Shown: one piece after another, positions 27,100 through 63,211 of the stretch
Position numbering within the stretch: position 1 is the stretch's first letter
Layout: the number at the start of each line of letters is the position of its first letter
Source: Mizuhopecten yessoensis
Taxonomy: Eukaryota
NCBI RefSeq assembly: GCF_002113885.1
Contig: NW_018405598.1
Coordinates: 1 to 64,000 of the forward strand
Reading direction: 5' to 3'
Length of the DNA: 64,000 bases
Position numbers and translations under genes: made by a program
The notes under the pieces: generated by a model
Told to the model about the DNA's origin: nothing
The model's input: the letters and a program-made list of their open reading frames with translations, nothing else
The model's database searches: none

Positions 27100-27335
27100 T
27101 ACAATGGTAGTCATGATGACCATACTGAATTGTACAATGGTAGTCATGGTGACCATACTGAATAGTACAATGGTAGTCATCGTGACTATACTGAATTGTA
27201 CAATGGTAGTCATGGTGACCATACTGAATTGTACAGTGGTAGTCATGGTGACTATACTGAATAATACAATGGTAGTCATGGTGACCATACTGAATTGTAC
27301 AATGGTAGTCATGGTGACCATACTGAATCATACAA
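27100..27335. repeat. 33-bp minisatellite (TACAATGGTAGTCATGGTGACCATACTGAATTG) x~7
   Basis: Direct inspection. Produces 11-aa-periodic ORFs in three frames. Confidence 0.95.
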
Positions 27336-32807: not shown

Positions 32808-34000
32808 CCATTCTATCTTCTCTCAACTCACACTTCCCACAACATTCTATCTTCTCTCTACAAACACTTCCCACACCATTCTATCTTATCTCTACCCAAA
32901 CTTCCCACAACATTCTATCTTCTCTCTACTCACACTTCCCACAACATTCTATCTTTTCTCAACTCACACTTCCCACAACAATCTATCTTCTCTCTACTCA
33001 CACTTCCCACAACATTCTATCTTCTCTCTACTCACACTTCCCACACCATTCTATCTTCTCTCTACTCACACTTCCCACACCATTCTATCTTCTCTCTACT
33101 CACACTTCCCACACCATTCTATCTTTTCTCAACTCACACTTCCCACAACAATCTATCTTCTCTCTACTCACACTTCCCACAACATTCTATCTTCTCTCTA
33201 CTCACACTACCCACACCATTCTATCTTCTCTCTACTCACACTTCCCACACCATTCTATCTTCTCTCTACTCACACTTCCCACACCATTCTATCTTCTCTC
33301 TACTCACACTACCCACAACATTCTATATTCTCTCTACTCACACTACCCACAACATTCTATATTCTCTCGTCCAACACTTCCCACACCATTCTATCTTCTC
33401 TCTACTCACACTACCCACACCATTCTATCTTCTCTCAACTCACACTTCCCACAACAATCTATCTTCTCTCTACTCACACTTCCCACAACATTCTATCTTT
33501 TCTCAACTCACACTTCCCACACCATTCTATCTTCTCTCTACTCACACTTCCCACAACATTCTATCTTCTCTCTACTCACACTTCCCACAACATTCTATCT
33601 TCTCTCTACTCACACTTCCCACACCATTCTATCTTCTCTCTACTCACACTTCCCACACCATTCTATCTTCTCTCTACTCACACTACCCACAACATTCTAT
33701 ATTCTCTCTACTCACACTACCCACAACATTCTATATTCTCTCGTCCAACACTTCCCACACCATTCTATCTTCTCTCTACTCACACTTTCTACAACAATCT
33801 ATCTTCTCTCTAATCACACTCCCCACAACAATCTATCTCCCTCTACTCACACTACCCACACCATTCTATATTATCTCCTCCAACACTTTCCCCACCATTC
33901 TATCTTCTCTCTAATCACACTTCCCACAACAATCTATCTTCTCTCTACTCACACTTCCCACAACAATCTATCGTCTCTCTACCAACACTTCCCACATTCT
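32808..34000. repeat. 34-bp C/T/A-rich minisatellite (CTCACACTTCCCACAMCATTCTATCTTCTCTCTA) x~35
   Basis: Period of 34 (e.g. 33001 to 33035). The top strand has almost no G. Confidence 0.97.
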
Positions 34001-36244
34001 ACATTTTCTCTTCAAACGCTTTGCACAACATTTTATCATTTCCTTATCACCACCACCCGTATTATTCTGCATTCTCTCTGCCAACACCTCTTCCAACTAC
34101 TCATCTCTGTTCCAATCATTCCCACAACAAACTATCATATATATATCAAAAAACCATTCCCTCTATCACCAGTATGCCTGTTCCTCCTAACTGTCAAAAT
34201 TTCATCTTAACCAGACATCTTTTTTCTCTACTTCATCCTCCCTTACCATATGCCTATCACTATCACAATCGTTTGCTCTCCATCATCTCCCTTACCCACC
34301 CCTTAACCAGATTCTTATATCAGCCATTTTCTTTCATTGCTCCATTATCACCAAACATTCCGTATCCTCCATTCTCATTATCTCAGCTTCAGACTCCTCT
34401 CCTCATAACATAAATCATTTTATTATAGATACAATTCACCATCGCGCTATCGCAATGAGGCAAAACACCAACATACCATGTATTCAACATACACAAATGC
34501 ACGCATGCAATGCACACATAGAGAAACGTCCTTAAATGAGCTGTTAATAGGACGTTAAACATAATAAAAACTTACCAAACCTCACCATATTTATTAGCTT
34601 TTGAGTTTGTTTTCATTCTACTAAAACCTATCACAGACAATACCACCCATTCAGAGAACATTTTAGAGGTTATTAAATTTCTGTGAAAACGCCAGATGTT
34701 GTACAGGCTTAGCAAATATTATCCATCGTACTTACCTCGAAATTATTTTATGTTAATATATTTTGTTTAATATATATTACTTTTTACAGACTGGGAGAAT
34801 GTCAATATATTATGAATATAAATTATTAAAACACTGAGGGACGCTGGTTCGAATCACAGTATATCACAATGTATATTCGTTTCGCCTTATCTCCTACTGC
34901 AAGTACATATACGCTAGTAAGATTATTTTCCTACGTGCATAAAATGTCATGTTTTTGTTGCTGCGTCACCACAAAACAGATTTACGAGTTTGATCGTGTG
35001 ATGACCCGTCTGTTTCCATGGTATGCGTCTAGTGTATATCAAAGTATCAACATTAAGTGATTATAATCCAGCGGCAGGGGTAAGTAGTCGCGAGGATATT
35101 AATGGGTATTGATTGGTGCAAACCAGTGCATGATTGAATAGAGTTTAAAAGGTTGTATTGATGCAATATGGTAAGATAATCAGAATATTAAACTTTCATT
35201 TGCGCGAAAGACAGCGATGTAAGCAATGTTATAATAAATATTAAAAGTCGACGGCGTCAACTTTTTTTTCCGTGTCACATCAATCGCGTTAAGTATATAT
35301 AGAGGATATTAAATGTTTTCCCGTCGAATATCATATATAATTCATGAGTACGGCAGAGTACCGATAATTTTTCTCGAGTGCAAAGCGAAAGAGAAAATAT
35401 CTGTGTATTCTGCCATACGAGGTAAAATATCAATTTTGACATATGCCACAGTGTGAAAGATCTCATTTGTATTAAGTTGATGGAATCGATATTTCAGTCG
35501 CAAAAATGTAATAGATAAGTTTAGGAAACGCATGAAACGTTTTAATTCTTTCAATACGTTCGTGACTTTAAGACGAATTTGGTTTCGCATCCTTATGGAG
35601 CTGAATTTAAACAAAAGCTATTAAAAGACGATAGCTTTCATTTCAAATTCAGAGTTTCAATAACTAACTGCATCTCATTATCCTCAAGAGCATGTAATTA
35701 AATATTAATGAACTTACTGGCATTTCCTCCTCAGCTGAATATGTTAGTAATTACTTATAGGGGTAATTGTCACCTTACTATTCAACTCTCTGACAACCGT
35801 GAACACTTCTTGTGTTTTATGGTCTGTTTTCCTTTCCTCGTTAGTAAAATATCAGCCTTTCTTCTGCTTATAGTGTTTACAAATCGAATCTCTACTCAAG
35901 AGCCTGTTCTAGGTTTTGAATAGAAGCACCCCAGTCATTAAGTATCACATCAATAGTTACTGCATGAACAGAGGCTTAAGAGTTGGAGCATTTCGAGATA
36001 TGATGTTTATATAAAAAAAAAAATTGATTTTTAAGACCATATTGTTGCGGCATTAAAGCTGATTATTAATTCTTTCTCATATCACTATTGCTACGCCGTG
36101 ATGCTTCAGGCAAAAGGCAGTGTGAGTATTTCTCTGTTGTCTTTAATCTTTATAGTGAACCTTCTTAAACGATTTTCACTAGCTCCTTGCTTTTACTTGG
36201 ACGTATAGTGTAGTGTCACATCCGCAGGTAATCCCTTAATGAGA

Positions 36245-39179: not shown

Positions 39180-39702
39180 TTGATCAAAATGACCTCAGCT
39201 TAAAACCATTGATAAACACTGATCAAAATGACCTCGGCTTAAAACCATTGATAAACAGTAATCAAAATTGACCTCAGCTTAAAACCATTGATAACCAGTA
39301 ATCAAAATGACCTCGGCTTAAAACCATTGATAAACAGTGATCAAAATGACCTCGGCTTAAAACCATTAATAAACAGTAATCAAAATGACCTCGGCTTAAA
39401 ACCATTGATAAACAGTAATCAAAATGACCTCGGCTTAAAACCATTGATAAACAATAATCAAAATGACCTCAGCTTAAAACCATTGATAGCCAGTAATCAA
39501 AATGACCTCGGCTTAAAACCATTGATAAACAGTGATCAAAATGACCTCAGCTTAAAACCATTGATAAACAATAATCAGAATGACCTCGGCTTAAAACCAT
39601 TGATAAACAGTAATCAAATTGACCTCAGCTTAAAACCCTTGATAAACAATAATCAAAATGACCTCAGCTTAAAACCATTGATAAACAGTGATCAAAATGA
39701 CC
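39180..39702. repeat. 39-bp minisatellite (ATCAAAATGACCTCGGCTTAAAACCATTGATAAACAGTR) x~13
   Basis: Direct inspection. The 153-aa ORF with a 13-aa period is a by-product. Confidence 0.97.
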
Positions 39703-40334
39703 AATATGTTTATGCAATGAAGCTTGGCAATATAGTCAATATTTCGTAAAATATGTTATTTAAAACCAATAAACCATATCGGCCGTATTTATTTTTTAAT
39801 TAATTTGTTTACGGTATACATCTTATTTATCTATAAATATATTTATATTGAAAATAATTTGATAATTTGCCGACATGTCGTTAGGTTCATAAAGCTATAA
39901 GCATAACTGATGCACTGGACTGTTGTAATTTGTGTGTCCTACATAAGTAGGCTACAGAAGGTCGTGCGATGCTATTCAACTAGCAAGGCCGTCTATTTAA
40001 TATTAGTTTTACTCAGATATAGAGTACGGAATGCCTTAAGCAAGCTAATCCTAGTGGGCAAGGTATCGGCCCTTGGGAAATATAATCAATGAACCTGATG
40101 TAGCAAGTGCCCAGCGAAAATCCGATACTAAGTTGATGAGATAAAATGTTAAAATCGAAATGACCTTAAGCTAGAAAGAGAATGAAAGTCTATCAGCGAG
40201 ATAAAAATGTGTAATCGTGCTTTTTTCGTGATGGTTGTCATTTGTCCTGAAGATGTGATTGTTCTACAGCATGAATACGTATCACACCAAGAAAGTATAT
40301 GGAAATATAAAGGTAGGATCTTGTCATTTGTCTG

Positions 40335-43283: not shown

Positions 43284-43422
43284 ATGAGTACCGTTAGTAC
43301 GGACAACGTGTCAAGCACATACACCACCACTAACATGGGTGTCGGAAGCATTGGACCGATCACCTGGGACGATGCTACATGGATCCTTACAAGCTCGTTT
43401 ATTATTTTCACAATGCAATCAG
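43284..43422 (+). CDS. amt: Ammonium transporter (Amt/Mep family), coding exon 1
   Basis: MSTVSTDNVSS...WDDATWILTSSFIIFTMQS(G) is the typical metazoan Amt TM1. Phase-1 donor G|GTAAGA. Confidence 0.9.
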
Positions 43423-45841
43423 GTAAGAAACGAACTCCATTAATTAATTCAAGCTTTCCCAAATCTGTTCAATATGCGAAATACGCAATGTATCCCAACT
43501 ACAGTCTAAAATATTTTAATTGCCCTAGTTTCATCCCAGGACCCAAACCCATTGTAATGTCAATTTGGAACATTGGTTTTAACATCTTGTTGTTACAAGC
43601 TGACTCTTGAATGTTGTAAGTTACTTTGTTGTATATTTTGCATCAATTTGATATCACATATACACAAACTATGAACATCTTACCTTAGCTATTACTTGAT
43701 GTTGTAAGTTTGCTGTTACCAATTGGTACGTATCTTACAAGTATGGAAAGGGAAAATACCAAAGAAATAACCAGGTTTTTTCCTGATATGTTACAAGTGT
43801 TATAACAGCGATCGTGACGTCACAAGTCATAAATAAATCCTGATATTTCGATGGGGCGGTTTAATCTCCCACTATCCCCACATATTACAGTACCAGACAT
43901 TACAGAGTTTAGTCGGTAATTTCCCGTTTGTTTTACATAGTTTAGTAAATTACATAATAAAACTAGTTTCAAATTCATTCCATCACTATCTTTCACAACT
44001 CACGCTTAGTTGATATGAAAATAATTATATGGAATGTTGTGATCATTTTTCTTCTATCGCAAGATTTTAATAACACGTTTCCAAATGATTTCCTCAGCAT
44101 TGTCATACTTATTTCCATTATTTGTTGTATTTCAATGTGAGCTTCCCAATAAAATGAATTTAGGGGAGAGTAATAATCATTAAATACGATAAACACGGGG
44201 ACTGCCTTGGGTTTTGCTCCAGTTACCGAATGAGTGTTTCATGTCCCAATCCTTCACCCCAGACCTGAAGGCGTACTTTTCTTTTATTCCAATCACCAGT
44301 TTAGCTTACCATGTTTCGCAAAAAAAAAAAGTTTAAATAGGAAAATTAAACCAAATTATGAATTATATGTTAATTAACCTTTAATTTCAATTTTACCGCT
44401 TCGGTAGTTTCTGCTTCGGATTTTTTCCGAAATAGTCACTCACGTGAGTTTGATCACATTTTGACTTTAGAATAAGATTATTTTTCAAATGTCTGATTTT
44501 TACACGCTTTGATTACAATATGATTGTATTGAAGCTTTCATTGTTTCTTTGCTTCTGTCTCAACAGTAGTTTAGACACTTTGTTTTCCAACGTTTTGGCC
44601 CTTAGCTTCACCAGGATGAAACATCTGTATGGTGCAGTGTAATTCATTTTTGGTATATTATATCTACTGCAAAATGTGATAGGTGCAATGGCCTGTGTGC
44701 GTCTCACGTTCATCATTCCTCAGTTTAAGCAACCCAGGAGTTTGTAATTAAAGTGCAAAAAGGAAATAATGTACCAGCAACAATGTTCTTCTCACGAATA
44801 CTAGATATATAATAACAGAATTAGTATTATAACCGGGATTACATTTAGTATCGATGAAAATGACCTTCAATGAGGAAACAAACCATTTATAATAAATACA
44901 AACAATATATTTGCTAGAAACTTTCTCCACAACTTTTGCTTCTTAAGAAAGTCCAAATAATTGATGCAGGGACATAGCTTTCATTTCATCATATTGTTAA
45001 TCAGTTATATCTCTCGACAAAAATAAGCAAGAGTAGTTGCTCATGTAAATATTTTACCCGCAAATAACAGTCAGTCAGACTGCACAGGAGATATGTAGTA
45101 GTAACTAATTCAATTAAGGAATGATCTATGGATGGATTGGGTTTTACATCTGCACAACAGAGAATGTCAGACGACGGCGGTGTCCACAGATAACTGGGCC
45201 ACTGACGAACAATTGTAAAATGTCATATCATTGAAGATTCAATGACTTGTCTAAAAACAGTCTAAAAAGATTCGCCATTCCGTCACGTTGTTCTAGCTAT
45301 GGGATAAACAGAGCTGTACAGGGAGAATTAACCAAAAAGGAAGAAAGGGAAAATAAATGAAAGGATCCAAATGTGCATAAGCGGAGGCAAATAAACTTTG
45401 GTTTATTATGTGTCGTCATCAAGAAAACAAAAGGGTCAAAACATCCTAAGCGTGCATGACCCCTGCACCCAGAGGTCACCTATAAAAGGCATGACAATTC
45501 GTGCCAGCTCACTCATTCAAAGATAATCTTTTGTTGGCAAACTGACCGGACTAAAGGGTCAGAAAAACCGATAGGTTGTAGAGGGTAACTTCACCGTCCA
45601 GCCTTCGGGCTTTCATTACGGAGAATCCCTCTCATCCATCGCAAGCTTGGATGAGGGGGGGGGATTATCCTACATTTCAAGCCCTACGGCTTGCCCGGTT
45701 AATTTGCATGTTCAAAGTGTTTGACAACAAACATCAGTAAATGTGAAAACTAATAGAGAACCCAAGATAACAAAACTTAGTTCAATTATTTTAATCATGT
45801 AAAATTTACAAATAAATTCAAAATTCATATCTTCGCCACTT

Positions 45842-46820
45842 CTACTCGGCCACTGTTGCACCCCCAAAGTTCATACGGTTCCCGTTTGCTGCAACACCCT
45901 CAGCAAACGAAGTTTCTGCTGTAGGTTCCACATCCCGTAGGTAAAACCTCCGGAATGTCTGAGACGATCTCCATGATGCGGTTTCCAAAATCGCCTTCAG
46001 CGAAGTTCCAGCCGAAAAGGCAGCTGATGACGCTGCTCCCCTCACCGAATGTGGCTTGAATCCCTCATTCACTCCTGCCTCTGTCATGGCACTGCGAATC
46101 CACCTCGCCAACGTGGAAGTGGATACCGATGTCCCCTGTTTGAAAGAGACTAACAGTTTATTAGACTTGCGTATAGAAGCTGTTCTTTCAAGATATTCCC
46201 TTAGCAATTTTATAACACAAAGTTTCGGATTGGAATATTTCATCAATTTTACCTTATAAAAAGGATCCGAACGTTTAGATATTTTCATGATCATTAACTC
46301 AGGGATAGTAAAGACTATCGAGTCACCCAAATCCTGCATGTATTATACATCCAGGTTAACCAATGTCTGTGCCCTGTGTGCCGATACCAACGCTATCAAA
46401 CAAGTCAATTTTTTGGTCAACATTCTAGATTCAATTGCGGGAATAAAGTTTCCTAATACTTCAACAAAATAGAAACATCCCATGTCGTGGAATACCTAGG
46501 TTTAGGGGGTTTTGCGTGAAAAGCCCCTTTCATGAACCTTGAAATGACCAAATTCCCAATCAGCCCAGTATTACCTAACAGAGCTGTGGTCTGTACCAAA
46601 ATACATTTATGGGTGTTTATGAGTTAAACAAATGTGTCAAATACTCTATTACCTGCGAGACAGTGGGACAATTGGCACCGACCTGTCTCTAATCACACCA
46701 AGACACCCAGTTTTTCCAGGCCAAGTCATATTGCCTAGCTGTCGATCTCTTCCATGATGAGAAGACCAGCATGGCAGCTTGTTTCGATAGGCCTATCCTT
46801 TGCAAGGATCTCCCGATACG
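45842..46820 (-). pseudogene. DIRS tyrosine recombinase (disrupted)
   Basis: N-terminal SSWKRSTARQYDLAWKNWVSWC and catalytic-region motifs SAHRAQTL, FKPHSVRGAASS (HxxR) and ASWRSSQTFRRFY (W...Y). Stops and frameshifts lie between 46340 and 46690. Confidence 0.9.
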
Positions 46821-47179
46821 CAACAAGCGATCACTCTCAAACTCTTTGCTAGAGGATGTGGTTCGCCCTGCGGGGATAGAAGAAGTCCCCGCCAACTGGG
46901 CAACCGAGCTGGCGCAGCAACAACAACGTCTAATAGCGTAGGTAGCCATACCTGGTTTCGCCACAAAGGAACTACAATTATCGCTAGACTCACCTTGTCT
47001 TCCTTTATCTTTTGCAAGGCCCTGGCTAACAGGCTGAAAGGAGGGAAAATATAAGGTGTAAGCCCATTCCATGACAACATAAATGCATCGTAACACATAG
47101 CATGTGGATCTGGCATCCAAGATAAAAATTTGTCCAGCTTATAATTAAGTCTACTCGCAAACAAATCAATGTCTGGCAT
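46793..47179 (-). pseudogene. DIRS Dam-like (N6-adenine) methyltransferase domain at the C-terminus of pol
   Basis: PDIDLFASRLN...DAFMLSW...YIFPPFSLLARALQKI...IVVPLWRNQVWLP is the characteristic DIRS1 MT-like domain. It overlaps the YR 5' region in another frame. Confidence 0.85.
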
Positions 47180-48557
47180 AAAAAAATGCCCACAAATTCT
47201 GTTGAATATCTCTGTATGTAATGACCACTCTCCTGATGATTATAATGCTCTAGACAGGAAATCTGCCACCACATTTTCTGACCCTTGAATATGACATGTT
47301 GACAGATGAATACTTCTATCCTCACACCAAATCCAAATAGCTTTAGCTAACTCATTCAACAGAGCTACATTACCACCAGGTTTATTAACATATGCTATAG
47401 TATACGTATTATCCGACCTTATCCTAAAACCCCTGGGTTCCTATCTCCCCCAGTTTGGCCCCCATCCTACGAGAGAGGCTCAGTTTCAATGACAACTTCC
47501 GGTTCACTAGGTCTAATACTCCTACCATTCATGCTGTCTATGTTATCGATCCACCAGCAAATCTCATTTCTAGACTGATCCGATAAAATTATAAAATCAT
47601 CGTAATCCTTGCCCTTGTGCAAGTGCCCAGTCTTTTCTCGTTCTGTGATTCTATAGAACAAACCTGATAATCTAACCGCTCTCAAAGCAGAGGTAAATAG
47701 ACCTACCAAACTTGCCAACTATCTTAACCTGACTTGACTTTTGTCTAATACCGTCTTGCAGTATTTACTTATCTTTTCTATCTTTTCCTTAGGAAGAGAT
47801 ACTGTGAAAGCAATCGAATTGATCAGATAACCAAGATGAACTATAACATTGTTCGCCACCATCATAGACTTCTCGTGATTAATTTGGAAACCTGCCTGTA
47901 CGAAGTTGCTAGCCAACATCTCACAATTGCTTTCGCACACCTCTTTATCTCTATCCTTGACCAAAGAGTCATCAATGTAATAAAATGCTACTACCCCCAG
48001 GCTCCGTACTTTAGCAAATATAGGTTTCAAACCCTTAGTGAAGACCCGACGGGCGCTAGTAAGGCCAAAAGGTAAAGATATAAACTCATAGAGACCACCT
48101 CTCCATCTAAATTTGAGGTATTTCCTATCTTCCTCATCAACCGGTATGCTTAAATATGCATCCTTTAAGTCTATCGACGTGAAGAAATCGCCTCTTTCCA
48201 CCGACTCGAGTACCACCTCTAGTGTTTCCTGTTTAAAATGGTGATACACAATACACTCATTTAATTTCCATAAATTTATTACTGGTCTGAATTTACCATT
48301 CTTTTTCTGTACTAAGAACAAGTTGGACACAAATTCCCCTTGTTCGCTCTGTGATTTTCTCACTGCCCCTTTTCTCAATAGCTCCTCTACTTCATAATCT
48401 ATCAATTCCATCTCATTGTTATCAAAAGCTATGGGACTTGGATTCCATGTCTGTACTGGAATTTCCTCAAACTCTAGTTTCAGCCCTTGGACTGTTTCTA
48501 GTATCCATTTATCATCAGTGATCCTCTGCCAATACAACAATTTCGATTTCAACAGAC
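47180..48557 (-). pseudogene. DIRS reverse transcriptase / RNase H (disrupted)
   Basis: RT motifs KKNGKFRPVINL, SIDLKDAYLSIP, LPFGL and YYIDD. In-frame TAG at 47719. The RNase H ETDAS-GWGA motif is frameshifted (~47480), the segment before SDNT is deleted, and NVVADFLSR is retained. Confidence 0.93.
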
Positions 48558-48583
48558 CTGAAGGTAAAGATCCACCTACCTTG

Positions 48584-49881
48584 CTATCTAGTCCCTCTGT
48601 TTCCGTGGACCGCTTTGCTGGTGGTTTCCACTTGCTTGGTATTGGGGTTTCTTGTACCCGTACCCTCGGCCCCTCGGAGCCTGGTAGCCGTGCCGTAAAA
48701 AAGGACGTGATCGTCCGAGTCCACGGCCCCTCTGTCCGTTCTGGTGGTTACCACCTCAGGCACCTCTGCCCCTGTTCTGTGCATGCTGGTTCATTCCGCT
48801 AAACGCCTTCGCCGTTTCGTTTAATTCTTTAACTTTTTTCCCCAGCTCGTCTCCGAACAATTGCGTTGAAATTGACATGTCCTTAGCACAAATGGCTTGA
48901 TAAGCCACCGGCAGTGCCGGTCTCATGAAATACCTTCTCTTCACCGAGATGGTCTGAAAAGCATTACCAACCAAAGCCAAAGCGTCCACACAAAGTGTGC
49001 GAAGCGTATCTCTAAATTGGGGCAAGCCCATTAACGCCTCTGTAAGTTTCAATACCGGTACTAAGCCCGAGCCTAGATATTTCTGTATCTCCTGCAGTTG
49101 CACGTCTTTCTGCTGTATTGGCTTTGGTAATTTCCCCCATATTTCAGGCTTACAACGTGGTACAGTAACACCCAGACAGTTCTGCGGTACAAATATTTCT
49201 CTATAATCTTACCTACCTCCGCATTTTTAGTGTACGACGTGTTAACTAATCGGGCAAACCCTTCGTGAGCCCCCGGTCCATATTTCTGTTCCCCAAAAAT
49301 TTCGGGCATATCGATTCCTTCAGCCACTGTGGCCGGGAAAATATCCGAATATATGTCGTCCATGTCCCCATTGGACGCAGCCCCGCTGATGGGTACAATA
49401 CCCTGGACACATTCATCTCAAACGGGGTCCTCATCTCAGTATATCAAACTCGAACCCATCGGGTCCATGTCTAAAATTGGTATCGTAACACGTGGTACCA
49501 CCGGTACGTCCTGTACCAAATGATCCCCGGAACCTCGTTCACGGGAAAGGCAGGCAATACGAGCCTCTACCGCCATTAACCTGGAAGCCATTTCGTCAGT
49601 TCGTACCTTTTTTGCTCCTCCGGCTTGCGTTGGGGCTCCTAAAGCCGCCGAAGCCACTCGTTTCATGCCGGCGCCCCCATTACCTACATAAGCGTAAGGG
49701 GCCTCGCCGCTTAGCACATCACCAAGTACATGTGCTTCCGGCTCCGGGACATCGTCCGCGGAAGGCTGTCTATTATGATTCGAGACGAAAAAATCGTCAC
49801 AGCCGTCTGCTTCATCCTCTGCGGGATGAAGCGAGATATTGTCATCGACCGACTCTTCGTCGTTACCAAAGTAACCGACAT
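48584..49881 (-). pseudogene. DIRS gag-like ORF1 (stops and frameshifts)
   Basis: Acidic N-terminus, then VPQNCLGVTVPRCKPEIWGKLP...DVQLQEIQKYL...DALALVGNA...KRRYFMRPAL...LFGDEL, typical of DIRS ORF1. Confidence 0.8.
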
Positions 49882-50309
49882 GTTCTTACCTTTCACCGTG
49901 GATATGTTGCGCCCCGGTTCACACGAACCATCACGGCCTCGTGTACTGTAATACAGTCTACTGTAGAACTGTAATAATACCGTATTCTATTTACGTCTGA
50001 ATGACAGACAGAACAACCTGTCTTATTCTGTGCGCGCACCTGAATGACATAAAAGTAAGCTGGCACGAGTTGTCATGTCTTTTATAGGTGACCTCTGGGT
50101 GCAGGTGTCATGCACGCTTAGGGTGTTTTTAACCCTTTGAAGGTCAGTCGCGCACCTAATAGGTGGCAAGTATGCAAATTAACCGGACAAGCCGTAGGGC
50201 TGGAAATGTAGGAGAATTACAAATAGTAGCTACTGAATCAGGATCTTTTAGAATTTTTTTCCCTAACACTTCCCTCACCTGTAATTTGTTTTATGTATGA
50301 CTGTTATAG

Positions 50310-50378
50310 GTTTTGGACTTTTGGAGGCAGGATTTGTTTGCGGGCAAAATCATGTCAACTATATGTGCAATCCTCCTG
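50310..50378 (+). CDS. amt: Candidate alternative Amt exon, diverged duplicate of the exon 2 5' segment ((G)FGLLEAGFVCGQNHVNYMCNPP)
   Basis: Acceptor TGTTATAG|, donor G|GTGAGA, 69 nt, phase 1-1. It is identical to the exon 2 start at 13 of 19 residues, with 7 synonymous codon differences. Confidence 0.65.
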
Positions 50379-51978
50379 GTGAGACTTCCAAATTAATCGG
50401 ATACACTATTTTATATTGGTTAATTTTGTTCTCCTTTCCTATTCTGAATGTTGGATTTGACACTACTGTTTGAACAGGCATCGCTTATTGAAACCAATGA
50501 AATATATTAAATGCGTATGCATAAAAAGTAAAACACACACACTTAAAGTCCCATTTTTCTCACAAATACATATCACAAGCTTATTCACATTCATGTATAC
50601 AACTTTTGTTATGATAAGAACACAGTATGATCAAATCCGTATTAGAAAACCCAAGAAATCACATCGAATACAAAAATTTCACTGCCTATTACCTTCGAAA
50701 AGATTCAATTTCACTGCCAAATGTACATTCAACTTGTTAGAGTTTGACTTGATGTGGTTTTCTAGAATACATTACACCGTGAAAACGATGCCACAGCAAC
50801 CAAATACACGGATACAGCCGCAGAAAATGTAATTGGTAACAGTTTTTTACCATGTACCCATAATTACATGTTATGTTGCTGTAAAGTTTCTGTAACCTTC
50901 GAAAAGATTCAATCCATCTTACTACCAAAATTAGATATCATAGTTTTTTAAACTTATAGTCTTATATGACCTTTCCTTAAAATCAAATTTCCTCTATGTT
51001 CGATTCGTGTATGCCTCTCGTTACAATTCCCATCACTTCGAACAAGTTCGGACGATTCGAATCTTTCATATACTCACACCGAACATATCTGGTGGACACG
51101 CATGATTATTTTGTTATTAACCATCATGCGAGAACAGTTCTCTGAATGTCTTGTTTAAGGTCGGTAAATGTTAAATCCAACATTATTGGATTGTCTTTGC
51201 TTAAAATATCATTTTTGTCAAGCACGATTTTGTAAGTGCACTAGCTTTCTGTGTTCACCTTTTCTAACTAACAGTTACAGAGTGGGTAAAAAGAACGAAT
51301 TTATTGTATTGTCCGTGTAAGGCAAACTATTCCCCGAGGGCGTATGCTTCAAATTTGTGATTTTTAGTGAATTATAAATGACTACTCCATTACCTGAACT
51401 GTTTTATCATAACGACGCAAACTATTTGATTGTGTTGACCTTTTCCATTGTTGTTTGTAATCAACTGTTGTTTGCCTTGGGAAATATACCTGATCGAGGG
51501 TGTACTAAAAGCCTGCTATGATACCGAATAATAAAACTAAAATATATACCGAAATCTCTCTGTCATGTTTTGTTTCACCGATACAAATTACAGACTTTTT
51601 TTTAAATCCCTTACCAGAAATTGAGAAAACCTGTCAAAAGCTATATATTAAATTATCCACTCTGTCTGCAGTGATATCTTAAAAGACCGATAACAAAGAC
51701 GTTGGGGGTACGGAGTTAAGTTGGAATACTAGCGTGGCGCTCTGACATGCTATGGACGGGGCGATTGGAACGTGATTGTTATGATCATCATAACAAGGAA
51801 ATTGTCCTGAAACGATAGCCTGGTAAAATGAGCTATTTTAGCTGGATATATCATCTATCGATTTCGGATATATTGTATTAATTGTATGTAAGAGTATTAA
51901 CAAATGTATCGTAAAATCTATATACTATTTGTTACTTTTATATATCGATATCACAATGATGAACCTTTTATATTTAAG

Positions 51979-52528
51979 GTTTTGGACTACTGGAAGTTGG
52001 GTGTGTTTCGGGAAGGAACGAAGTGAACATCATGATGAAGAACGCTGTAGATGTTATATTTGGAGGCCTCTCCTACTGGGCCGTAGGATTCGGTCTCAGT
52101 TTTGGGATGGATTATGGTTCGAACCCTTTCTGCGGTGTCGGTTCATTCTTCGTTGACTCGTCTGACGAACGCATGGGTCTTCTATTTGCCACGTTTGTTT
52201 TCCAGTTGTCATTCGCTACCACAGCAACAACCATAGTCTCTGGAGCTATGGCAGAGCGAACCAAAATGACGGCTTATATCCTGTTTTCGATAACGAACAC
52301 AGTGGTATACTGTATACCTGCGCATTGGGAATGGGCGACAAATGGGTTCCTGAGAACCATGGGATGTGTCGACATTGCAGGTTCCGGTGCTGTGCATCTC
52401 ACTGGTGGTATGTCTGCTATGGTGGCCGCCATCATTCTTAAACCCCGTTTGGGAAGATACGACAAAGGAACAGGTCAGAAAACGCCACCGAATCCAGTCA
52501 GTGCCCTCGTTGGCATGTTTATGCTTTG
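51979..52528 (+). CDS. amt: Ammonium transporter, coding exon 2
   Basis: GFGLLEVG...FQLSFATTATTIVSGAMAER...AHWEW...DIAGSGAVH (Amt signature with the first pore His). Acceptor TTTAAG, donor TG|GTAAGA. Confidence 0.96.
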
Positions 52529-54208
52529 GTAAGAGACCTTTGTTTTGCCTCGTCGTCTTTGCACATGTTTTATATATTTCGAGAGTAGCTTTTGTATATT
52601 TCCGTGATATTATTCATCGAACACTGTTGTTACTCTAAACAGAATCTATTTCATTATAATATATATAAGACATATGTTACAATAATGAAGGGAGGGAGGG
52701 GCTTATTACAACACTTAGCAGAAGTGTTTGTTTCGTGAGGTTAAAGAGACCAAGAATACGGTCAGGACAGCTTATCCGTAAAACACAACAGACTGCACTT
52801 ACAGATTCCAGGATAGCAAGCACCGTATGTGACACCCATATTTATCTGCTGCCAAATCGCCAGAGCGCGTGTTCATCACCAACGTAGAGCTAATACGCAA
52901 TGATGATATGAGAGTAGTTCTATGGTAGGTCTAAGTAGGGTAGAGATACACCATTAATTAGAAAGGAAGAAAAGGAAGAATAATGACCATGATGTTTTTT
53001 AAGTGAAAGTTCAATGAAATTTTTAAAAACCTTTCTTTTTTGTAGACATTTGATTCCATTGTTATCGACAAAACCTCCTCTACCTTAGTGATATTGATGT
53101 ATTTAATTTTTAGTTGTGTCATATATTAAATAATTTAAGATATAATTACTGTTAATGAACAAAATGGTACAGGTGTCACACGATAATCGACTAACAACCC
53201 TTGAAACTATTAAAGGGTTTTGAAGTTAAATATATTTTTACATAATTAGTGTATGCTCCATCTTTATTTTTTCAAAGATAGCCATTTAACTGTGTGATAT
53301 TACAATCTAACATTTGTTAATTAATCTTGGGTGTTGTACGTTATACAAGAGGCGCTGCTATATAATATAACAGAGGTAAACATCAATAGATCAATCGCCA
53401 TTTGTGTCTGTTCTTCATAAAACAATATCAAATAATGCATTTGAAGTCTGATGCTGCATTTTTGTATTTAAATGCCTTGATAAATTGCGTGACATTCGTT
53501 ATTTGATATACTTAAACGCAAGCATACTTTGATGGTTCTTTATTCCATTTTGTGTGCTCAACACTAACAAGTGTATGAACTTTATCACTGCACGCAACGG
53601 AATCGCCTCGTCTTTTAGCAATCATCCCCTTACTTAGCCTATCAGAGATCAATCACTCTAAGCCCTAACAAGGTAATAACAGCATTGGGCACGTGACGGG
53701 AAACATTAGAAAACTACGTCAAAACTGTGAAAAAAACCGGGATAGTCACTTAAAATATGTACGATGCCTGACACCGGTAGAACCAACGTGTGTATATACA
53801 GACATGACGGCATTGACCGCGTTATCTGTTTTGCAGCTAATTTATATTTGATGTTGCATTTCATTTGTGTTTCCAGAGATGAAATGTTCTTTTACTCGTT
53901 CTTAGCTTTTCTCACTTAAGCGTTAACCATTATCCAGACGTTTTAAGTCTGTTTTCTGTACACACAAAACAAATCTTATAAATAGGTGTTCAGTTGTTTA
54001 TTTTGTCTCTGTACATAAAAACAACTTATAGATAGATGTTTAGTTGTGTTTTCTGTATACAATGACAACGTATCTGAAGGTGTCCAGTGGTGTATTTAAA
54101 AGTAAGGCAGTAACCATCCCAAATCTACTAGACTCTCTATTGTTAATTAAACAGGCAGAGACACTGTAATGCTTGTTAGATGTGTATGTTTAACACGCTC
54201 TGATTCAG

Positions 54209-54280
54209 GTGGGGTTGGCTGGCCTTTAATTGCGGTAGTACTTTTGGGATATCCGGTGGAAAATGGAAACTTGCAGCAAA
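54209..54280 (+). CDS. amt: Ammonium transporter, coding exon 3
   Basis: WGWLAFNCGSTFGISGGKWKLAA (W-x-x-F-N gate motif). Boundaries TTCAG| and |GTAAGT. Confidence 0.95.
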
Positions 54281-54815
54281 GTAAGTTAAATTAATAAAGT
54301 ATGAACATATAAAATATTTACATAGACACTCTTTAAAAAGCACAATGAGAATAAAATTAGGTCTTCCCGAAATGTACGCGTCGTGTGCTTGTTCGACGAA
54401 GGGAATCAAATGTAAAGTCACATTTTTAAATAGTGAATAGAAAGTGTGACAGCGAAGACGGTTATATTGTCAACAAATAAAGGAGATACTACAATTGAGT
54501 TCAAGGAAAAGATCACTTGTCAATGTGATCAATGATTTATTTCTTTATTTACATCTGTAGTTTAACTCATTAGAGCAAACGTCCTGTAAAGTGACTAGCG
54601 GTAATTTTGAAAATGAAATGGGACACTATTTAATTTATGTATAATAAACATCGCGTCTTGCATTTCTCAAAAACACTAGGAATGCAACGGTACAATGCAT
54701 TTTATTCCTCGGTGACTCCGAACTATAACGTCTAAATGTAACGGTGCCTCTCACTTAACATACGGTATGTTTTTTGTTTCAATACGAGGACAATCTTTAA
54801 TGTCCATGTTATTTC

Positions 54816-54956
54816 AGTATACTAGGAAATGTTCGCCTTTCGCCGCTAAAATCAGTATACGCCCAGTTGTAAATTCGCTGTAACGATTATGGCAGCATTT
54901 CTGAGCGCGAAAAAGGCTAAAACTAAACTGCAGTGAAAAATGTCCCGGTATCCAGT
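54816..54956. mobile_element. Possible degenerate MITE
   Basis: Imperfect inverted ends (CAGTATACTAGGAAATGTTCGCC ... GTGAAAAATGTCCCGGTATCCAGT) with internal TTCGCC/GCGAAA motifs. Confidence 0.35.
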
Positions 54957-55186
54957 TTCTGTTTTACATGAACAATCTTTGAAGGTTAAAATTAACAGTG
55001 TGCACACCATAATCTTTTTTTATTATTATCTTTTTTGTTTTGTACGTTAATGGTTGAATAGATGTAAGGGGCTTCATACGTATTCTAAATGAACATAGAA
55101 TGGCTGTGCAGATTTATTACATCCTTACCACAATGGGAATGGGTAGCCAAAGTATAGTTTAATCCCTATATTGTTTTTTATTACAG

Positions 55187-55246
55187 ATCAGCCGTCACAA
55201 CACTTATTGGATCTATGGGAGGAGGTGCCACCGGCGTCATTATATC
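55187..55246 (+). CDS. amt: Ammonium transporter, coding exon 4
   Basis: SAVTTLIGSMGGGATGVII. Boundaries TTACAG| and |GTAAGC, phase 2-2. Confidence 0.92.
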
Positions 55247-55609
55247 GTAAGCCTGACAACCCTCGATCAGGATTATAATCAACCATCATTCAATATACCT
55301 CACATTTGTGTTCTTTCACAAATGATCGGGAATCTTTGTCATAAATAGTGAGAAGTATTTAAAATAAGGAATAATGGTCAAGTAATAACAATCACGGGTT
55401 AATAGGCAACTTACATAAGATTGACAAAGATGTTAATTTCATAACTGACAATTCTTGACCTCATCTTGTACTCATTTCGGTATATCAACATTAATCATTT
55501 AAATCTTAAATAGTACGATCGAATGTGATAGCAAAACACAAAGCTTGTGCAGTAATAAATAATTAACACTTAATAGTGTTCATGTCGCCTTTGTTTTCGC
55601 TGTGATCAG

Positions 55610-55683
55610 GTACATCATCAGCCGGAAGTACGCCGTCGACTACCTGGTGAACTGTGTACTCTGTGCTCTAGTGTCCATCACAG
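55610..55683 (+). CDS. amt: Ammonium transporter, coding exon 5
   Basis: YIISRKYAVDYLVNCVLCALVSIT (equivalent of NG-L-GLV-IT). Boundaries ATCAG| and |GTAAGT. Confidence 0.92.
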
Positions 55684-56739
55684 GTAAGTAGCCGTGATTG
55701 GTAGGATAGCACAGTACAATGGCTATAGCATGTAACCCAGATACACAGGATAGTCTCTTAGTGCAAAAAGATTTGAAAAACGTTACTTATATAAACCAGC
55801 GTGGCGCGGTAAGGTACACGACTGATATCATATATCAAACAACAATTGTCAAACTGGTGGTACTTAACAGCTGTCCGTACAGGATCAGCGCTGTTAAAAC
55901 GGTTCAATTGTTTGATAATATCGTATTGATTTAGATACACTTTTAATGACATAAGGTGTGTCCTCTTAACATTGAGACAATTACGGCATAGCAGCGTATC
56001 GTGCTTGAGCTTAATGACTTTGTTGAGGATTGAACGTCAGAAAGCTAACATTTTCCTTCTTAAAAGAAATTTCATGGATAATTGTCAAAGGTGTTGGTAG
56101 TCATTTTTTTAAAGTCTGGTATACCAGAAAGTTATAGATATGAATTAATGTGTGACCCCTGAAAAAAGATGGTAGGACAAGACGAGGTGAACCGCAATGT
56201 GAAGCGCCTAGTGTTTCATCAATGACACTGATTCAGATTACTTTCAATTGAATGCCATGGCCCTTAAGTTGTCGTTATAGCAGCTGTAACGTTGGATACT
56301 GCTTAACCTCCTTTCAAGTTGGCTGTTATATCAATTAAACCATCATACACGATACATACACTCATTTAAAATCATTATTAATTTTGATAAATATAAAAAA
56401 AAAATTGGGATGACAATAGTTCTTTCAATGAAAAAAAACACATAAATATCGAACAGCTTTCGAATGCATTCATAGTCAATATAAATTCCAAGTGGAAGGT
56501 GACAATTCAACATTAAGCGCTTAAATGACAGAGCGCCAATAGCATTGCGCAACGCCGTTGGCATATTTCGACGTGTTCCTAATTTTCGGTCCAGCAATCC
56601 TACAGGTGTTCGATACAACTATGAAACGAATATAGCAGGGCAAGTCTTCAGTGTTACTATACTACTAAGGAAAGGGAAATAGAGTTCCTTTGTTACGGAA
56701 CTAAGGAGAGAGGTAACATGTATGATAAATATGTTGTAG

Positions 56740-59258: not shown

Positions 59259-60524
59259 TCAACAGCAAATGAACACACTATAATATCATACAGACCAACA
59301 TGGTAATCTGAACGGCCCATCAACATAAGAATGTCATGCAAGATCACAAAATAAACAATGGGCGTGGCAATAGACTCTAGAAGTAGCAAATATTATAGGA
59401 AATGGACAGATAAAGATTCTTATTGTCGCAAAGGTCGCGGCAAACCAGTTAATGGCTTTTTCCCAAGGGACACGGAGATAACCACCAGAGACTAATTAGG
59501 ACTGACATAAGTCGACTCGTTAGATACAGCGACGGTATACAGGAAGACAAATAGTTTATCTTTATCACAATAAGAGTGTTGTCGGTATCAACTGTTCTCT
59601 CCCAGCTCTAGAGCATCTATATTTTGCTTTAAAATGTTGTAATTTTCTAGTGACAGTGTTTTTAACCGTGTCGAAACAATATATACCTTGAAACAGGTCA
59701 TTCATTGAATCGTACTACAAATTCACATAACAAGTCGTTCCTTGAATCTGTTTAAAACCCATGTACATTATAACAAGTCATACCTTGATTCATATTAAGA
59801 AGATATTCTCCGTCGGCGTAACAACAACATTCATTACTACAATTTTCGTCCTATCTTATGTCGTACTAGTATATACAGGAATACTTTCCTGCCTTCTGTT
59901 ATTGATCTGGAACGCCTTTCTTTACAGATTATTTCAGGTTAAACACAGATATATTAAATTTGAAAGTGCGCAAGATGTATAAAGAAGAATCACAATAATG
60001 CAACAGGAGTTTCATCTTAATAATAAATAATAAACAGATTTGCTTATTTAATTTGTTGTTTGCAAAACATCCATTGTGAATCAAATAAAAACAGAATAAA
60101 CAAAGCCTCAAATGTTATTTATCATCAAAGTCACGGTTTTTATTATACGTTATTTATTAATCAGTGTTGTCGTTTTAGGAAACGTTTAAATGATTTGATT
60201 TTGAGCAGCAGCAAGCCTATCTCACGAATACATTATGATAATATTCTGTCAATTGTGTCAGTAATCCAGGAATCTCAAATAGACATCAAATGTAATATTT
60301 CTCATATAAATGTCAGTAATAATACACATACTATCTTGCGTCTGTAGGCGTAGACGTAAGACTGTAAAAATGTACTTGTCGACATAAGTGTAATGTACTT
60401 ACACAATAGCGATATAAAGCCGTATAGACATAATGAGTACATTGTGTAAAATTGTATTCAACCATTACACATTACTCTGGCATGAATACTAATAAAACAC
60501 GTGATAAAGTCACTAGAGTATCCA

Positions 60525-61170
60525 AGGAAACCAGGCAATCACCACCACCGCTAAGACAACCAAACCATCACGAGCAACCCTAGAAAACCAAGCCATTACA
60601 AACATTGTAGAGAGAACCAAGCCACCACGAGCAATCCTAAAAGAACCAAGCCATCGCGAGCATCCCCAAGATACCAAACCTTCACTAGCATCTCCAAAGG
60701 AGCCAAGCCGTCACGAGCATCCCCAAGGCAACCAAGCCATCACGCGCATCCCAATAGAAACCAAGCCATCATGAGCATTCCCAAGGCAAACGGCCTTCGC
60801 GAACATCTCCGAAGGAGCGAAGCCGACACGTGCATCCCCAAGGGAATCAAGCCTTCACGAGCATCCCCAATGCAACCAAGCCATCACAAGCGTTCCCTTG
60901 AGAGAAAAGGCATAACAAGCATCCCAAAGGGAACCAAGCCATCACAAGCACTCCCAAGGCAACCAAGCCTTCACGAGCATTCCCAAGAGAACCAAGTCAT
61001 CACGTGCATCCCCAAGGGAACCATGCCTTCACGAGCATCTCCAAGGGAACCAAGCCATCACGAGCATCCCCAAGGCAACCAAGCCTTCACGAGCATCCCC
61101 AAGAGAACCAAGCCATCACGTGCATCCCAAAGGTAACCATTCCTTCACGAGCATCCCAAAGGGACCCAAA
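60525..61170. repeat. Degenerate 30-bp minisatellite (GAGCATCCCCAAGGGAACCAAGCCATCAC-like) x~21
   Basis: Direct inspection. Gives 10-aa-periodic ORFs in several frames. Confidence 0.9.
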
Positions 61171-63211
61171 CAACAACGAGCTGGAGACCTTAACCAACAT
61201 GAGTATTCTCTTGAGGACCAAAAAGCTATCACAAGAACTCCTAAGAGCACAAAAACCAACATAGGTAACATAGAGAACACTGTTCCACGTCACAAGCTGA
61301 TCTGGACATTCCTCTTTTAATTTAAATTGCTGTTTTGACATCCATGATTGCTCTACCGAGATAAAGGGAGTAACAAATTATTTTAAGGGATGGGATAAGA
61401 TATTAAATGCAAAGAAAACTAAACAAGTATGCTTCTTTTCTTCTAGATCAAGACAAATATTAGGGTTGAGTAACAGCGTATTATGTTCGTAAACACCAGA
61501 AGCCTTTATATAAGCATTAGTAAAATCTCTGTGTGACGATGCTTTGATATCATTTCTTGCCTTTTATACGAGTACATTTCACGATGTTTTTGTTTTGTAT
61601 GATGCAATATACTTTCGTTCCTTTTTCCGGCCATACCGGTTGTTTCATTAAATAAAGCTGATATTGAAATAAATCTAAAAAAGATGTGAGAGAAAATGTA
61701 TTGCAGTTCTATTTTCAAAAATATATTGATGATGATTTTTGCCGTATACCTCGCGTTGCGTTTTAACTATAGTGCACCTCTTTTAATACATACCTTAAAA
61801 ATATACATCGAACTATTTTAGCAGGTTTTTGAAATTTTGTTTAATTGGAAGAGAAAGGTCAAAAAGGCGACCCAAATCATCTATTTTGTTAAGATTGTAC
61901 ATACATATATAACATACACCAAGATTGTATTGTTATATCCTGAGAAGCCACATCCTCGTTAAGGCTGTATACGTGACCTCTAACAACGCGACACATTCGA
62001 CCTTGTAAACGGACACGGCAACCCTTGTCAAACCGGATGTTATACCGGAGGCTGGAAAGGAGATTCAGATTTTAAACTTAAGGGTCAGCAGTTATAATCG
62101 TGACATATATGGACTACTTTCCAGTTTGGATAACACATCACACATCGTTGTCTACTACGTATACTTAAAGACACTGAAATAGAGTTAAGCATACAGTTTA
62201 TTGTTAGGGTTCACAAATTTAAATAACCTTTCCCGAGTTTCTAGTTTCCATGTTCTTGATATTTACTCTAAATATTGAAGTAATATACATGAAAGCCAAT
62301 ACATTATAATAGTAAGTTGTAATTCTGTTGATTAATACAATCAAAAATGAAAAAAATAACATCTTTGACGGTCAAGAAGTTAATTCCATTCAAAGAACCT
62401 GGACTGAAATAGTATTTCAATCGGAGAACAGCAGTTTGTTCGCAGTGTATTAAACTAAAACTCCATTCATAGAACCAGGTAGAATACGGCAAATGATATG
62501 TCATATACCTGCTCCCAAGTGAAGATAACTCTGCAATACGCAAAGACGGAATTCAGAAGGAAGGACTGGAGCACGACTAACTGTGACGTTGATATAAGAA
62601 ATAGCAACAATTGTTAAGCAATGTAAATAAATGTTCATCCCTTCCAACATAAAGGACATTATCGGCACTATAGTGATCGTTTCGAGTAGTACCTGAGGAG
62701 AAACGGCTTCTGTCACCTACACAGCATCCCGAACTTGAGTTTGTTATACAGATTTTCCTTACGGAGATTGGCTACGCTGATTCTGGAATAGCTGTACCAC
62801 AGCGTCATCTTCCTCATCTTAATATTCTAGCGTGTATCTACAGTAAGACAATAACGGTCACGTCACTAACAAGGTATCTGATTAACTTGCAGACTTAAAT
62901 TTCATGACGATTAACTTTTTTTTCGCGTTAGTCACATCAATTCCTGCCATGCTGGTCATAGTTGACACGCACTTTCAGAGCATGTTCTAAGAATCATGAA
63001 CGTAAAACACGTACGGGTGATTATATCATTAAAGGATAAGTGTCTATAAGGCCCTATTTTGGGCCCCGGTATTTTCGGAATCTCACCTCTTTAATTTGTT
63101 TAAAGATGTCCTATTGCATTGCATGCGAAAAAACTAAGGAAAAAGTTTGTTCGAAAGTGAGTTTTTTGGGGTACCAAAAGGGGAAGATAAATCACAAAAA
63201 TAATTTCGTAC

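What the first reader, a model, noticed from the sequence alone, without database searches (positions are those of the whole stretch)
50310..50378. Hidden 69-nt duplicated Amt exon with a purifying-selection signature, possibly a switchable TM1-loop module
Seen: a 69-nt AG/GT-bounded, phase 1-1 segment encodes (G)FGLLEAGFVCGQNHVNYMCNPP, versus (G)FGLLEVGCVSGRNEVNIMMKNAV at the start of exon 2. Thirteen of the first 19 residues are identical, and 7 of those use different synonymous codons (CTT/CTA, TTG/CTG, GAG/GAA, GGA/GGG, GGG/GGA, AAT/AAC, GTC/GTG). That pattern fits an old duplicate conserved as protein rather than a decaying copy. It is too short for the ORF track. Known: this segment is the end of TM1 and the first cytoplasmic loop, and cytoplasmic loops of Amt/Mep proteins contact the regulatory C-terminal tail. 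Inference: inclusion as a cassette gives a 543-aa isoform with a tandemly doubled GFGLLE motif, which could alter gating, trafficking or trimer activity. I know of no description of such an Amt isoform.
Basis: partly seen in the sequence, partly recalled or inferred. Interest (0 to 1): 0.85.

Follow-up and report, generated by a model that had tools for sequence, protein, structure and literature searches.

The report
Conserved duplicated mini-exon in scallop Amt
Intron 1 of a Yesso scallop ammonium-transporter gene holds a 69-base copy of the start of exon 2 that four scallop genera have kept intact, so it is most likely a real scallop-specific optional exon, although no RNA evidence for its use could be obtained here.

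Summary
Window 50310-50378 is an AG/GTGAGA-bounded, phase 1-1, 69-nt copy of the first 69 nt of Amt exon 2, with 13 of 19 residues identical.

- **Host gene:** Mizuhopecten yessoensis XP_021351721.1. Its annotated models skip the segment.
- **Not a decaying relic:** the segment lies in intron 1 of the orthologue in Pecten maximus, Ylistrum balloti and Argopecten irradians. Splice sites and the open Amt frame are kept in all three.
- **Conservation:** the segment differs at 8-14% of sites between species. Four-fold degenerate sites of exon 2 differ at 39-64%, and the rest of the intron cannot be aligned.
- **Already annotated once:** the P. maximus RefSeq protein XP_033749231.1 (546 aa) includes it as a cassette.
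- **Lineage-specific:** it is absent from oyster, pearl oyster, ark shell and a scallop paralogue.
- **Kind of selection:** constraint is largely at the nucleotide level. Synonymous divergence is far below that of exon 2, the last 9 codons have dN/dS near 1, and the flanking intron is conserved. Two complementary intronic islands lie downstream. This is the usual profile of a regulated alternative exon.
- **RNA test failed:** four RNA runs gave no reads on the whole gene.
- **Replacement route:** its internal acceptor is not conserved.

Verdict: a new member of a known kind, a cassette exon derived from tandem exon duplication. Its function is untested.

The parts
43284..43422 (+). Amt exon 1: start codon to CAG|GTAAGA donor, phase 1. 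Encodes the N-terminus and the first half of TM1 (...DDATWILTSSFIIFTMQS).
   Evidence: 100% match to XP_021351721.1 residues 1-47.
50282..50309 (+). Conserved 3' splice-site region of the cassette. TTATAG is invariant in four scallops.
   Evidence: Alignment A1; BLASTN island.
50310..50378 (+). 69-nt duplicated mini-exon (cassette), phase 1-1, encoding (G)FGLLEAGFVCGQNHVNYMCNPP.
   Evidence: The orthologous segment is included in P. maximus XP_033749231.1.
50379..50471 (+). Conserved donor (GTGAGA, invariant) and about 90 nt of conserved downstream intron. Contains arm 1 of an RNA duplex (about 50446-50470, core TGGATTTGA at 50452).
50622..50654 (+). Second conserved intronic island, arm 2 (core GATCAAATCC at 50629), complementary to arm 1.
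   Evidence: Duplex dG is -22 to -26.5 kcal/mol, reached by at most 2 of 1000 shuffles. Present in M. yessoensis, P. maximus and A. irradians, not found in Y. balloti.
51979..52528 (+). Amt exon 2 (550 nt), the parent of the duplicate. Its first 69 nt are the homologous part.

Best explanation
The segment is a scallop-specific alternative cassette exon.

Origin (inferred): a tandem duplication copied the acceptor and the first 69 nt of Amt exon 2 into intron 1, and a GTGAGA donor arose at the copy's end. This happened before the divergence of Mizuhopecten, Pecten, Ylistrum and Argopecten, and after the split from oysters, pearl oysters and ark shells.

Shown: the copy, its two splice sites, its open Amt frame and its flanking intron are under strong purifying selection.

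Inferred:
- It is spliced in between exon 1 and exon 2 in a minority of transcripts or in particular tissues or conditions, as in the P. maximus RefSeq model.
- It adds 23 residues.
- The cassette's GFGLLEAGFV completes TM1.
- Its divergent tail, ending N-(P/A)-P-G, together with the displaced exon-2 copy of GFGLLEVGCVSG, forms a first cytoplasmic loop about 23 residues longer.
- The downstream complementary intronic islands probably take part in regulating inclusion.

The effect on transport is unknown. The most likely effect is altered gating or regulation through the enlarged loop 1, possibly acting within mixed trimers.
For: - **Presence in orthologues:** the segment is in intron 1 of three other scallops with AG and GTGAGA intact and 22 of 22 codons open. 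The peptides are FGLLEAGFVCGQN followed by HINLMCNAP, QISLKCNPP or HFNLKCNPP.
- **Frame:** only the Amt frame is open in all four species. Read-through past the donor meets a stop after 3-13 codons in three species.
- **Rate:** cassette sites differ at 8-14% per species pair, against 39-64% at four-fold sites of exon 2 (Fisher p 3e-4 to 3e-13).
- **Intron background:** the cassette block and one 25-33 nt island are the only alignable parts of the 3-8.5 kb intron.
- **Flanks:** constitutive exons 1 and 2 carry only 8-12 nt of conserved flank. The cassette has about 28 nt upstream and about 90 nt downstream.
- **Alternative-exon profile:** length is a multiple of 3, and synonymous divergence is low (dS 0.08-0.51 against 0.8 to above 1.3 in exon 2). 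These traits are known from the literature on alternative exons, cited from memory.
- **Annotation:** P. maximus XP_033749231.1 (546 aa) contains ...TMQSGFGLLEAGFVCGQNHINLMCNAPGFGLLEVGCVSG....
- **Structure model:** the AlphaFold model of that protein keeps a confident Amt fold (pTM 0.81). TM1 is residues 29-57, ending in the cassette copy. Residues 60-81 are a low-confidence loop, and TM2 runs from residue 85.
- **RNA duplex:** the complementary conserved islands are the best partner of each other in the whole intron in P. maximus and A. irradians.
Against: - Four M. yessoensis RNA runs gave zero reads on 50230-56000, constitutive exons included, so this is no test.
- RefSeq models of M. yessoensis, Y. 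balloti and A. irradians skip the exon and list no second isoform. Inclusion is therefore at best minor in the tissues sampled.
- The P. maximus model could be an ab initio choice by the gene predictor.
- Substitutions across the four orthologues show no significant codon periodicity by my count from the sequences (7, 4 and 3 at third, first and second positions). The last 9 codons have dN/dS about 1.
- Five family-invariant residues are lost in the copy.
- No fragment proteins carrying the cassette were found in the protein collection.
- The AlphaFold placement follows the way MAFFT aligned the doubled motif, so it is not independent evidence.
Confidence: 0.65

Rival explanations
1. The block is a conserved non-coding element, such as a decoy acceptor/donor pair or an RNA structure that controls the efficiency or order of removal of the long first intron. 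It never appears in mature mRNA. The P. maximus model is then a prediction artefact, and the open frame is a by-product of nucleotide-level constraint on a sequence that began as coding.
For: - Synonymous sites are as conserved as non-synonymous ones.
- The last 9 codons have dN/dS about 1.
- Conservation runs about 90 nt into the intron and includes a complementary pair of islands.
- Three of four RefSeq annotations skip the segment.
- No reads were available to show inclusion.
Against: - Conservation of the open frame stops exactly at the donor.
- All three changes in the first 13 codons are synonymous third positions.
- Both splice sites are invariant, and the length keeps the frame.
- A gene predictor accepted it as coding in P. 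maximus.
- A decoy exon has no need to keep the Amt frame open in four genera.
Confidence: 0.22
2. The copy replaces the start of exon 2 rather than adding to it. The cassette donor would join an internal acceptor (TAG at exon-2 nt 70-72, next base 52051), giving a same-size protein with an alternative TM1 end and loop 1.
For: In M. yessoensis and Y. balloti, exon 2 reads GTA GAT at that point. An AG therefore exists, and the frame would be kept as ...MCNPP-DVIFGG.... The product would look structurally neater than a doubled motif.
Against: - The AG is absent in P. maximus (GTC GAT) and A. irradians (GTT GAC).
- The 26 nt upstream are purine-rich coding sequence with no pyrimidine tract.
- The product would lack the family-invariant K21-N22.
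- The only database isoform with the cassette uses the normal exon-2 acceptor.
Confidence: 0.05
3. The segment is a neutral relic of a partial Amt duplication and is decaying.
For: Only one eighth of exon 2 was copied. The 3' third of the copy has lost the family motif KN(A/V)(V/I)D. A DIRS-like retroelement lies about 90 nt upstream in this species.
Against: - Neutral sites between these scallops are 39-64% different, and the intron is otherwise unalignable. The copy is 86-92% identical, without indels or stops, in four genera.
- The retroelement is specific to M. yessoensis and lies outside the conserved block.
Confidence: 0.02

Closest known systems
Alternative exons derived from tandem exon duplication (Letunic, Copley and Bork 2002, as cited in PMC9013439; Ivanov and Pervouchine 2022, PMC9013439)
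   Same: An unannotated copy of a neighbouring exon lies in the adjacent intron, on the same strand and in the same phase, with its own splice sites and conserved in related species. PMC9013439 reports such unannotated copies and tissue-specific RNA support for some of them.
   Different: Most described cases are whole-exon copies of equal length used in a mutually exclusive way. Here only the first 69 of 550 nt were copied, a new donor was acquired, and the only conserved productive route is tandem inclusion, which doubles a motif.
Tandem inclusion of a duplicated exon, for example the COE/EBF HLH motif (title and abstract of PMC2394523, seen, not read further)
   Same: Both copies of a duplicated exon can end up in one mRNA, giving a tandemly repeated protein motif.
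   Different: In vertebrate COE genes inclusion is mandatory. Here three of four annotations skip the copy, so inclusion appears optional.
Competing or looping intronic RNA structures at duplicated exons (PMC6071210, title and abstract seen; discussion in PMC9013439)
   Same: Two short conserved complementary boxes lie in the intron next to a duplicated exon.
   Different: Only one pair of boxes was found, both downstream of the cassette donor. No docking-site/selector series was seen, no covariation could be tested with three sequences, and one species lacks arm 2.
Amt/Mep/Rh ammonium transporters, first cytoplasmic loop (E. coli AmtB, yeast Mep2, plant AMT1; from memory, not tested here)
   Same: The host is a standard animal Amt (PF00909). 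The duplicated part corresponds to the end of TM1, loop 1 and the first turn of TM2. In known structures this region lies near the cytoplasmic exit and the regulatory C-terminal region.
   Different: Among the 454 Amt proteins collected here, only the P. maximus model has a tandemly doubled TM1-end/loop-1 motif.

Membership tests
Amt/Mep/Rh family (host gene) | Significant match to Pfam Ammonium_transp PF00909 across the exons | tested here: met
   Exon 2 E=1.6e-52. Later exons E=1e-14 and 6e-06. 100% match to M. yessoensis XP_021351721.1.
Alternative exon derived from tandem exon duplication | Sequence homology to the adjacent exon, same strand and reading phase | tested here: met
   13 of 19 residues identical, and 78% nt identity over 32 nt.
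Alternative exon derived from tandem exon duplication | Own acceptor and donor, frame-preserving length | tested here: met
   TTATAG| and |GTGAGA are invariant in four species. Length is 69 nt.
Alternative exon derived from tandem exon duplication | Conservation in orthologues above the intron background | tested here: met
Alternative exon derived from tandem exon duplication | Transcripts that contain the exon | tested here: inconclusive
   Zero reads on the whole gene in four RNA runs, so no test. One RefSeq model contains it (P. maximus) and three skip it. No transcript-derived fragments were found.
Mutually exclusive exon pair | Two homologous exons of about equal length, of which exactly one is included | tested here: not met
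   69 nt against 550 nt. The internal acceptor needed for substitution is absent in two of four species. The only model with the cassette also has all of exon 2.
Recursive splice site / RS-exon | A strong 5' splice site is regenerated when the upstream exon is joined to the site (AG|GTRAGT) | tested here: not met
   The junction would read CAG|GTTTTG, with mismatches at positions +3 to +6.
Decaying pseudo-exon | Divergence at the neutral rate, with indels or stops in some lineages | tested here: not met
   8-14% divergence against 39-64% at neutral sites, with no indel or stop.
Known structured RNA (Rfam) | Match at or above a family's gathering score | tested here: not met
   The best hits in 50200-52000 score 14-22 bits against thresholds of 40-65.

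The most novel reading that the evidence does not exclude
The cassette and its conserved intronic RNA duplex form a regulated switch unique to scallops. Inclusion would produce an Amt subunit whose first cytoplasmic loop is enlarged by a displaced half-copy of TM1. That subunit would change gating, or would inhibit or re-tune mixed trimers. This would be a natural, splice-controlled regulator of ammonium transport.
Probability: 0.2. Interest if true: 0.65.

Novelty: new member of a known kind. Interest (0 to 1): 0.45.

Why it matters
The case shows that an apparent exon relic can be told from a maintained exon by comparative data alone. If the exon is used, it gives transport physiologists a natural variant that changes only the TM1 end and first cytoplasmic loop of an Amt. 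That region is thought to take part in gating and in cross-talk with the C-terminal regulatory tail. It also corrects or qualifies the annotation of this gene in four scallop genomes, where one model includes the exon and three omit it. Finally, the paired intronic boxes offer a small, testable example of RNA structure next to a duplicated exon outside insects and vertebrates.

Tried and rejected
- **RNA reads:** X8, X11, X12 and X13 were laid on 50230-56000 and gave no read at all, not even on exons 2-5, so this is no test.
- **Transcript-derived proteins:** searching the protein collection with the P. maximus N-terminus, both full-length and as a 150-aa piece, returned only XP_033749231.1 with the cassette.
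- **Retrocopy or longer copy:** a tblastn alignment suggested homology running upstream (FVLCMTVIG against FIIFTMQSG) and downstream (YW). The upstream peptides are not conserved and contain a stop in A. irradians. Read-through stops after 3-13 codons in three species. The DNA alignment covers only 50304-50344. Rejected.
- **Internal acceptor (replacement) route:** not conserved.
- **Recursive splicing:** the regenerated donor is poor. Rejected.
- **Capture by the neighbouring retroelement:** the DIRS-like element ends at about 50217, is absent from the other scallops, and lies outside the conserved block. Rejected.
- **Known RNA family:** none. The region as a whole does not fold better than shuffles (z = +2.1).
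- **Dating the duplication from nucleotide identity:** uninformative. The copy is about 60% identical to every exon-2 start, outgroups included.
- **Not done:** I did not build or search a joined exon 1 + cassette + exon 2 model of the M. yessoensis protein. The database protein of P. maximus was used instead.

Full report
**What is there**

The window carries an Amt ammonium-transporter gene on the + strand.
- Exon 1 is 43284-43422 and ends CAG|GTAAGA.
- Exon 2 is 51979-52528 and matches Pfam Ammonium_transp at E=1.6e-52.
- Further exons lie near 54210, 55185, 55620, 56733, 57781, 58146 and 60609.
- The exons translate 95-100% identically to XP_021351721.1 and OWF51366.1 of Mizuhopecten yessoensis, the Yesso scallop.
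- At 50310-50378 lies the reported segment. It is preceded by TTATAG and followed by GTGAGA, is 69 nt long, and reads (G)FGLLEAGFVCGQNHVNYMCNPP in the phase left by exon 1.
- It matches the first 19 residues of exon 2 at 13 positions. The repeat finder reports the pair independently.

Only the first eighth of the 550-nt exon 2 was copied.

**Surroundings**

Intron 1 is 8556 nt in this species. About 4.8 kb of it is a minus-strand retroelement with reverse-transcriptase and tyrosine-recombinase ORFs and inverted terminal repeats at 45428-45709 and 50054-50217, so it is DIRS-like. The element ends about 90 nt before the segment. It is absent from the other scallops and plays no part in the finding.

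**Expression test**

RNA runs of the same species label were found. Four of them, from four studies with 1.7-1.9 Gb read each, were laid on 50230-56000. None gave a single read, not even on constitutive exons 2-5. The tool itself marks this as no test.

**Comparative test**

A library search with exon 2 and two searches of the protein collection gave the orthologues from Pecten maximus (P0209, XP_033749231.1, 546 aa), Ylistrum balloti (P0239, 520 aa) and Argopecten irradians (P0217, 520 aa).

The P. maximus RefSeq protein contains the cassette in tandem with the exon-2 motif...TMQSGFGLLEAGFVCGQNHINLMCNAPGFGLLEVGCVSGRNEV.... It is the only one of 454 collected Amt proteins with a closely doubled motif.

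I fetched the three loci. tblastn finds the segment in intron 1 of all three, at L001 6273-6341, L002 5229-5297 and L003 4412-4480. The alignment shows the following.
- TTATAG| and |GGTGAGA are invariant.
- There are no indels.
- All 22 full codons are open.
- Only the Amt frame is open in all four species.
- Read-through beyond the donor hits a stop within 3-13 codons in three species.

The segment is absent from intron 1 of the oyster, pearl-oyster and ark-shell orthologues and from a scallop paralogue, all of which share the same intron position. The duplication is therefore specific to this gene in scallops and predates the split of the four genera. The copy keeps Ala at position 7, as the outgroups do, whereas scallop exon 2 has Val.

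**Strength and kind of selection**

- Between species pairs, four-fold degenerate sites of exon 2 differ at 39-64%. All sites of the cassette differ at only 8-14% (Fisher p from 3e-4 to 3e-13).
- BLASTN between the introns aligns nothing except the cassette block (window 50282-50471) and one small island (50622-50654).
- A neutral relic is therefore excluded.
- The constraint is not simply that of a protein. NG86 gives cassette dS 0.08-0.51 against 0.8 to above 1.3 for exon 2, and cassette dN 0.06-0.12 against 0.04-0.075.
- The first 13 codons show only three changes, all synonymous and all in M. yessoensis.
- By my parsimony count on the sequences, the last nine codons have about eight replacement and three silent changes (dN/dS near 1), yet still change several times slower than neutral sites.
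- Compared with 398 family members, the copy keeps every invariant residue of the TM1 end. It has lost K13, E15, I18, K21 and N22 of the loop and TM2 start.
- It ends in N-(P/A)-P followed by Gly in all four species.

Four traits together are the classic marks of conserved alternative cassette exons (knowledge from the literature, not tested here): low synonymous rate, relaxed amino-acid constraint, a length divisible by three, and conserved flanking intron. The flank is about 28 nt upstream and about 90 nt downstream, against 8-12 nt at constitutive exons 1 and 2.

Drift of exon 2 alone can produce those differences.

**A conserved RNA pairing**

The downstream conserved intron contains TGGATTTGA (50452). 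The second island contains GATCAAATCC (50629).
- Each motif occurs once per intron in M. yessoensis, P. maximus and A. irradians, 178-317 nt apart.
- The extended arms form duplexes of -22 to -26.5 kcal/mol, reached by at most 2 of 1000 shuffles.
- In P. maximus and A. irradians, arm 2 is the best partner of arm 1 in the entire intron.
- The pairing appears in the minimum-energy and centroid folds.
- Y. balloti lacks arm 2.
- M. yessoensis has an even better species-specific partner at 51153.
- Three sequences are too few for a covariation test.
- No Rfam family matches.

I take this as a probable splicing-regulatory structure. This is an inference.

**Which splice route**

Cassette inclusion keeps the frame and uses only conserved sites. 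The alternative noted earlier in the scan (s1-519575) has the copy replacing the first 72 nt of exon 2. It needs the AG of GTA-GAT inside exon 2. That AG exists in M. yessoensis and Y. balloti but not in P. maximus (GTC GAT) or A. irradians (GTT GAC), and it has no pyrimidine tract. Joining the cassette to exon 3 would shift the frame. Recursive splicing is unlikely because the regenerated donor would be GTTTTG.

**Protein consequence**

An AlphaFold model of the P. maximus protein with a 100-sequence alignment keeps a confident Amt fold (pTM 0.81).
- TM1 is residues 29-57, so the cassette's GFGLLEAGFV finishes TM1.
- Residues 60-81 are a low-confidence loop. They comprise the cassette tail plus the displaced exon-2 GFGLLEVGCVSG.
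- TM2 starts at residue 85.

Inclusion would thus lengthen the first cytoplasmic loop by about 23 residues. The model follows the way the aligner placed the doubled motif, so it is illustrative only. Any effect on gating or trimer regulation is conjecture.

**Verdict**

The finding is a maintained, scallop-specific, duplicated mini-exon, most likely an optional cassette exon (confidence about 0.65). The main rival is a conserved non-coding splicing element with a mis-predicted P. maximus model (about 0.2).

It belongs to a known kind, tandem exon duplication feeding alternative splicing (PMC9013439). Its less usual features are a partial-exon copy and tandem rather than exclusive use. A full-text search found no paper linking ammonium transporters with duplicated or cassette exons among the listed results.

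No joined M. yessoensis exon model was built or searched. No contig was taken for human, and no N run was filled.

Noticed in passing
window 45428-50217 (- strand): A DIRS-like retroelement sits inside Amt intron 1. It has ORFs with RVT_1 (47722-48747) and a tyrosine recombinase / Phage_integrase domain (45845-46342), bounded by inverted repeats 45428-45513/50054-50139 and 45664-45709/50172-50217. It is absent from the orthologous introns of three other scallops.
   Followed up: partly
window 60609-61133 (+), with similar open frames over 60517-61317: The last exon of the M. yessoensis RefSeq model (residues 520-694) is a run of degenerate repeats such as ...TKPSRASPRQPSHHEH.... The orthologous models in Y. 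balloti and A. irradians stop at 520 aa, and P. maximus at 546 aa with the cassette. The tail may be a species-specific extension or an annotation artefact.
   Followed up: no
window 50446-50470 and 50622-50654; also 51153-51184: A conserved complementary pair of intronic boxes lies downstream of the cassette (see parts). In M. yessoensis only, a stronger partner for arm 1 (dG -28.9) lies at 51153.
   Followed up: partly
window 32716-34532 (+): About 1.8 kb is open in all three + frames and made of repeats such as ...SHNILSSLYSHFPQHSIFSL.... This looks like a tandem-repeat array rather than a gene. The only Pfam match is below threshold.
   Followed up: no
P0456 (XP_021344183.1, 170 aa, on a 1797-nt contig): A second M. 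yessoensis record is nearly identical to the C-terminal part of this Amt. It is probably a haplotig or an assembly duplicate.
   Followed up: no
window 27080-27469 (both strands) and 39255-39746 (+): Further short tandem-repeat arrays give long open frames (MVVMVTILNCT... and NQNDLGLKPLINS... units).
   Followed up: no
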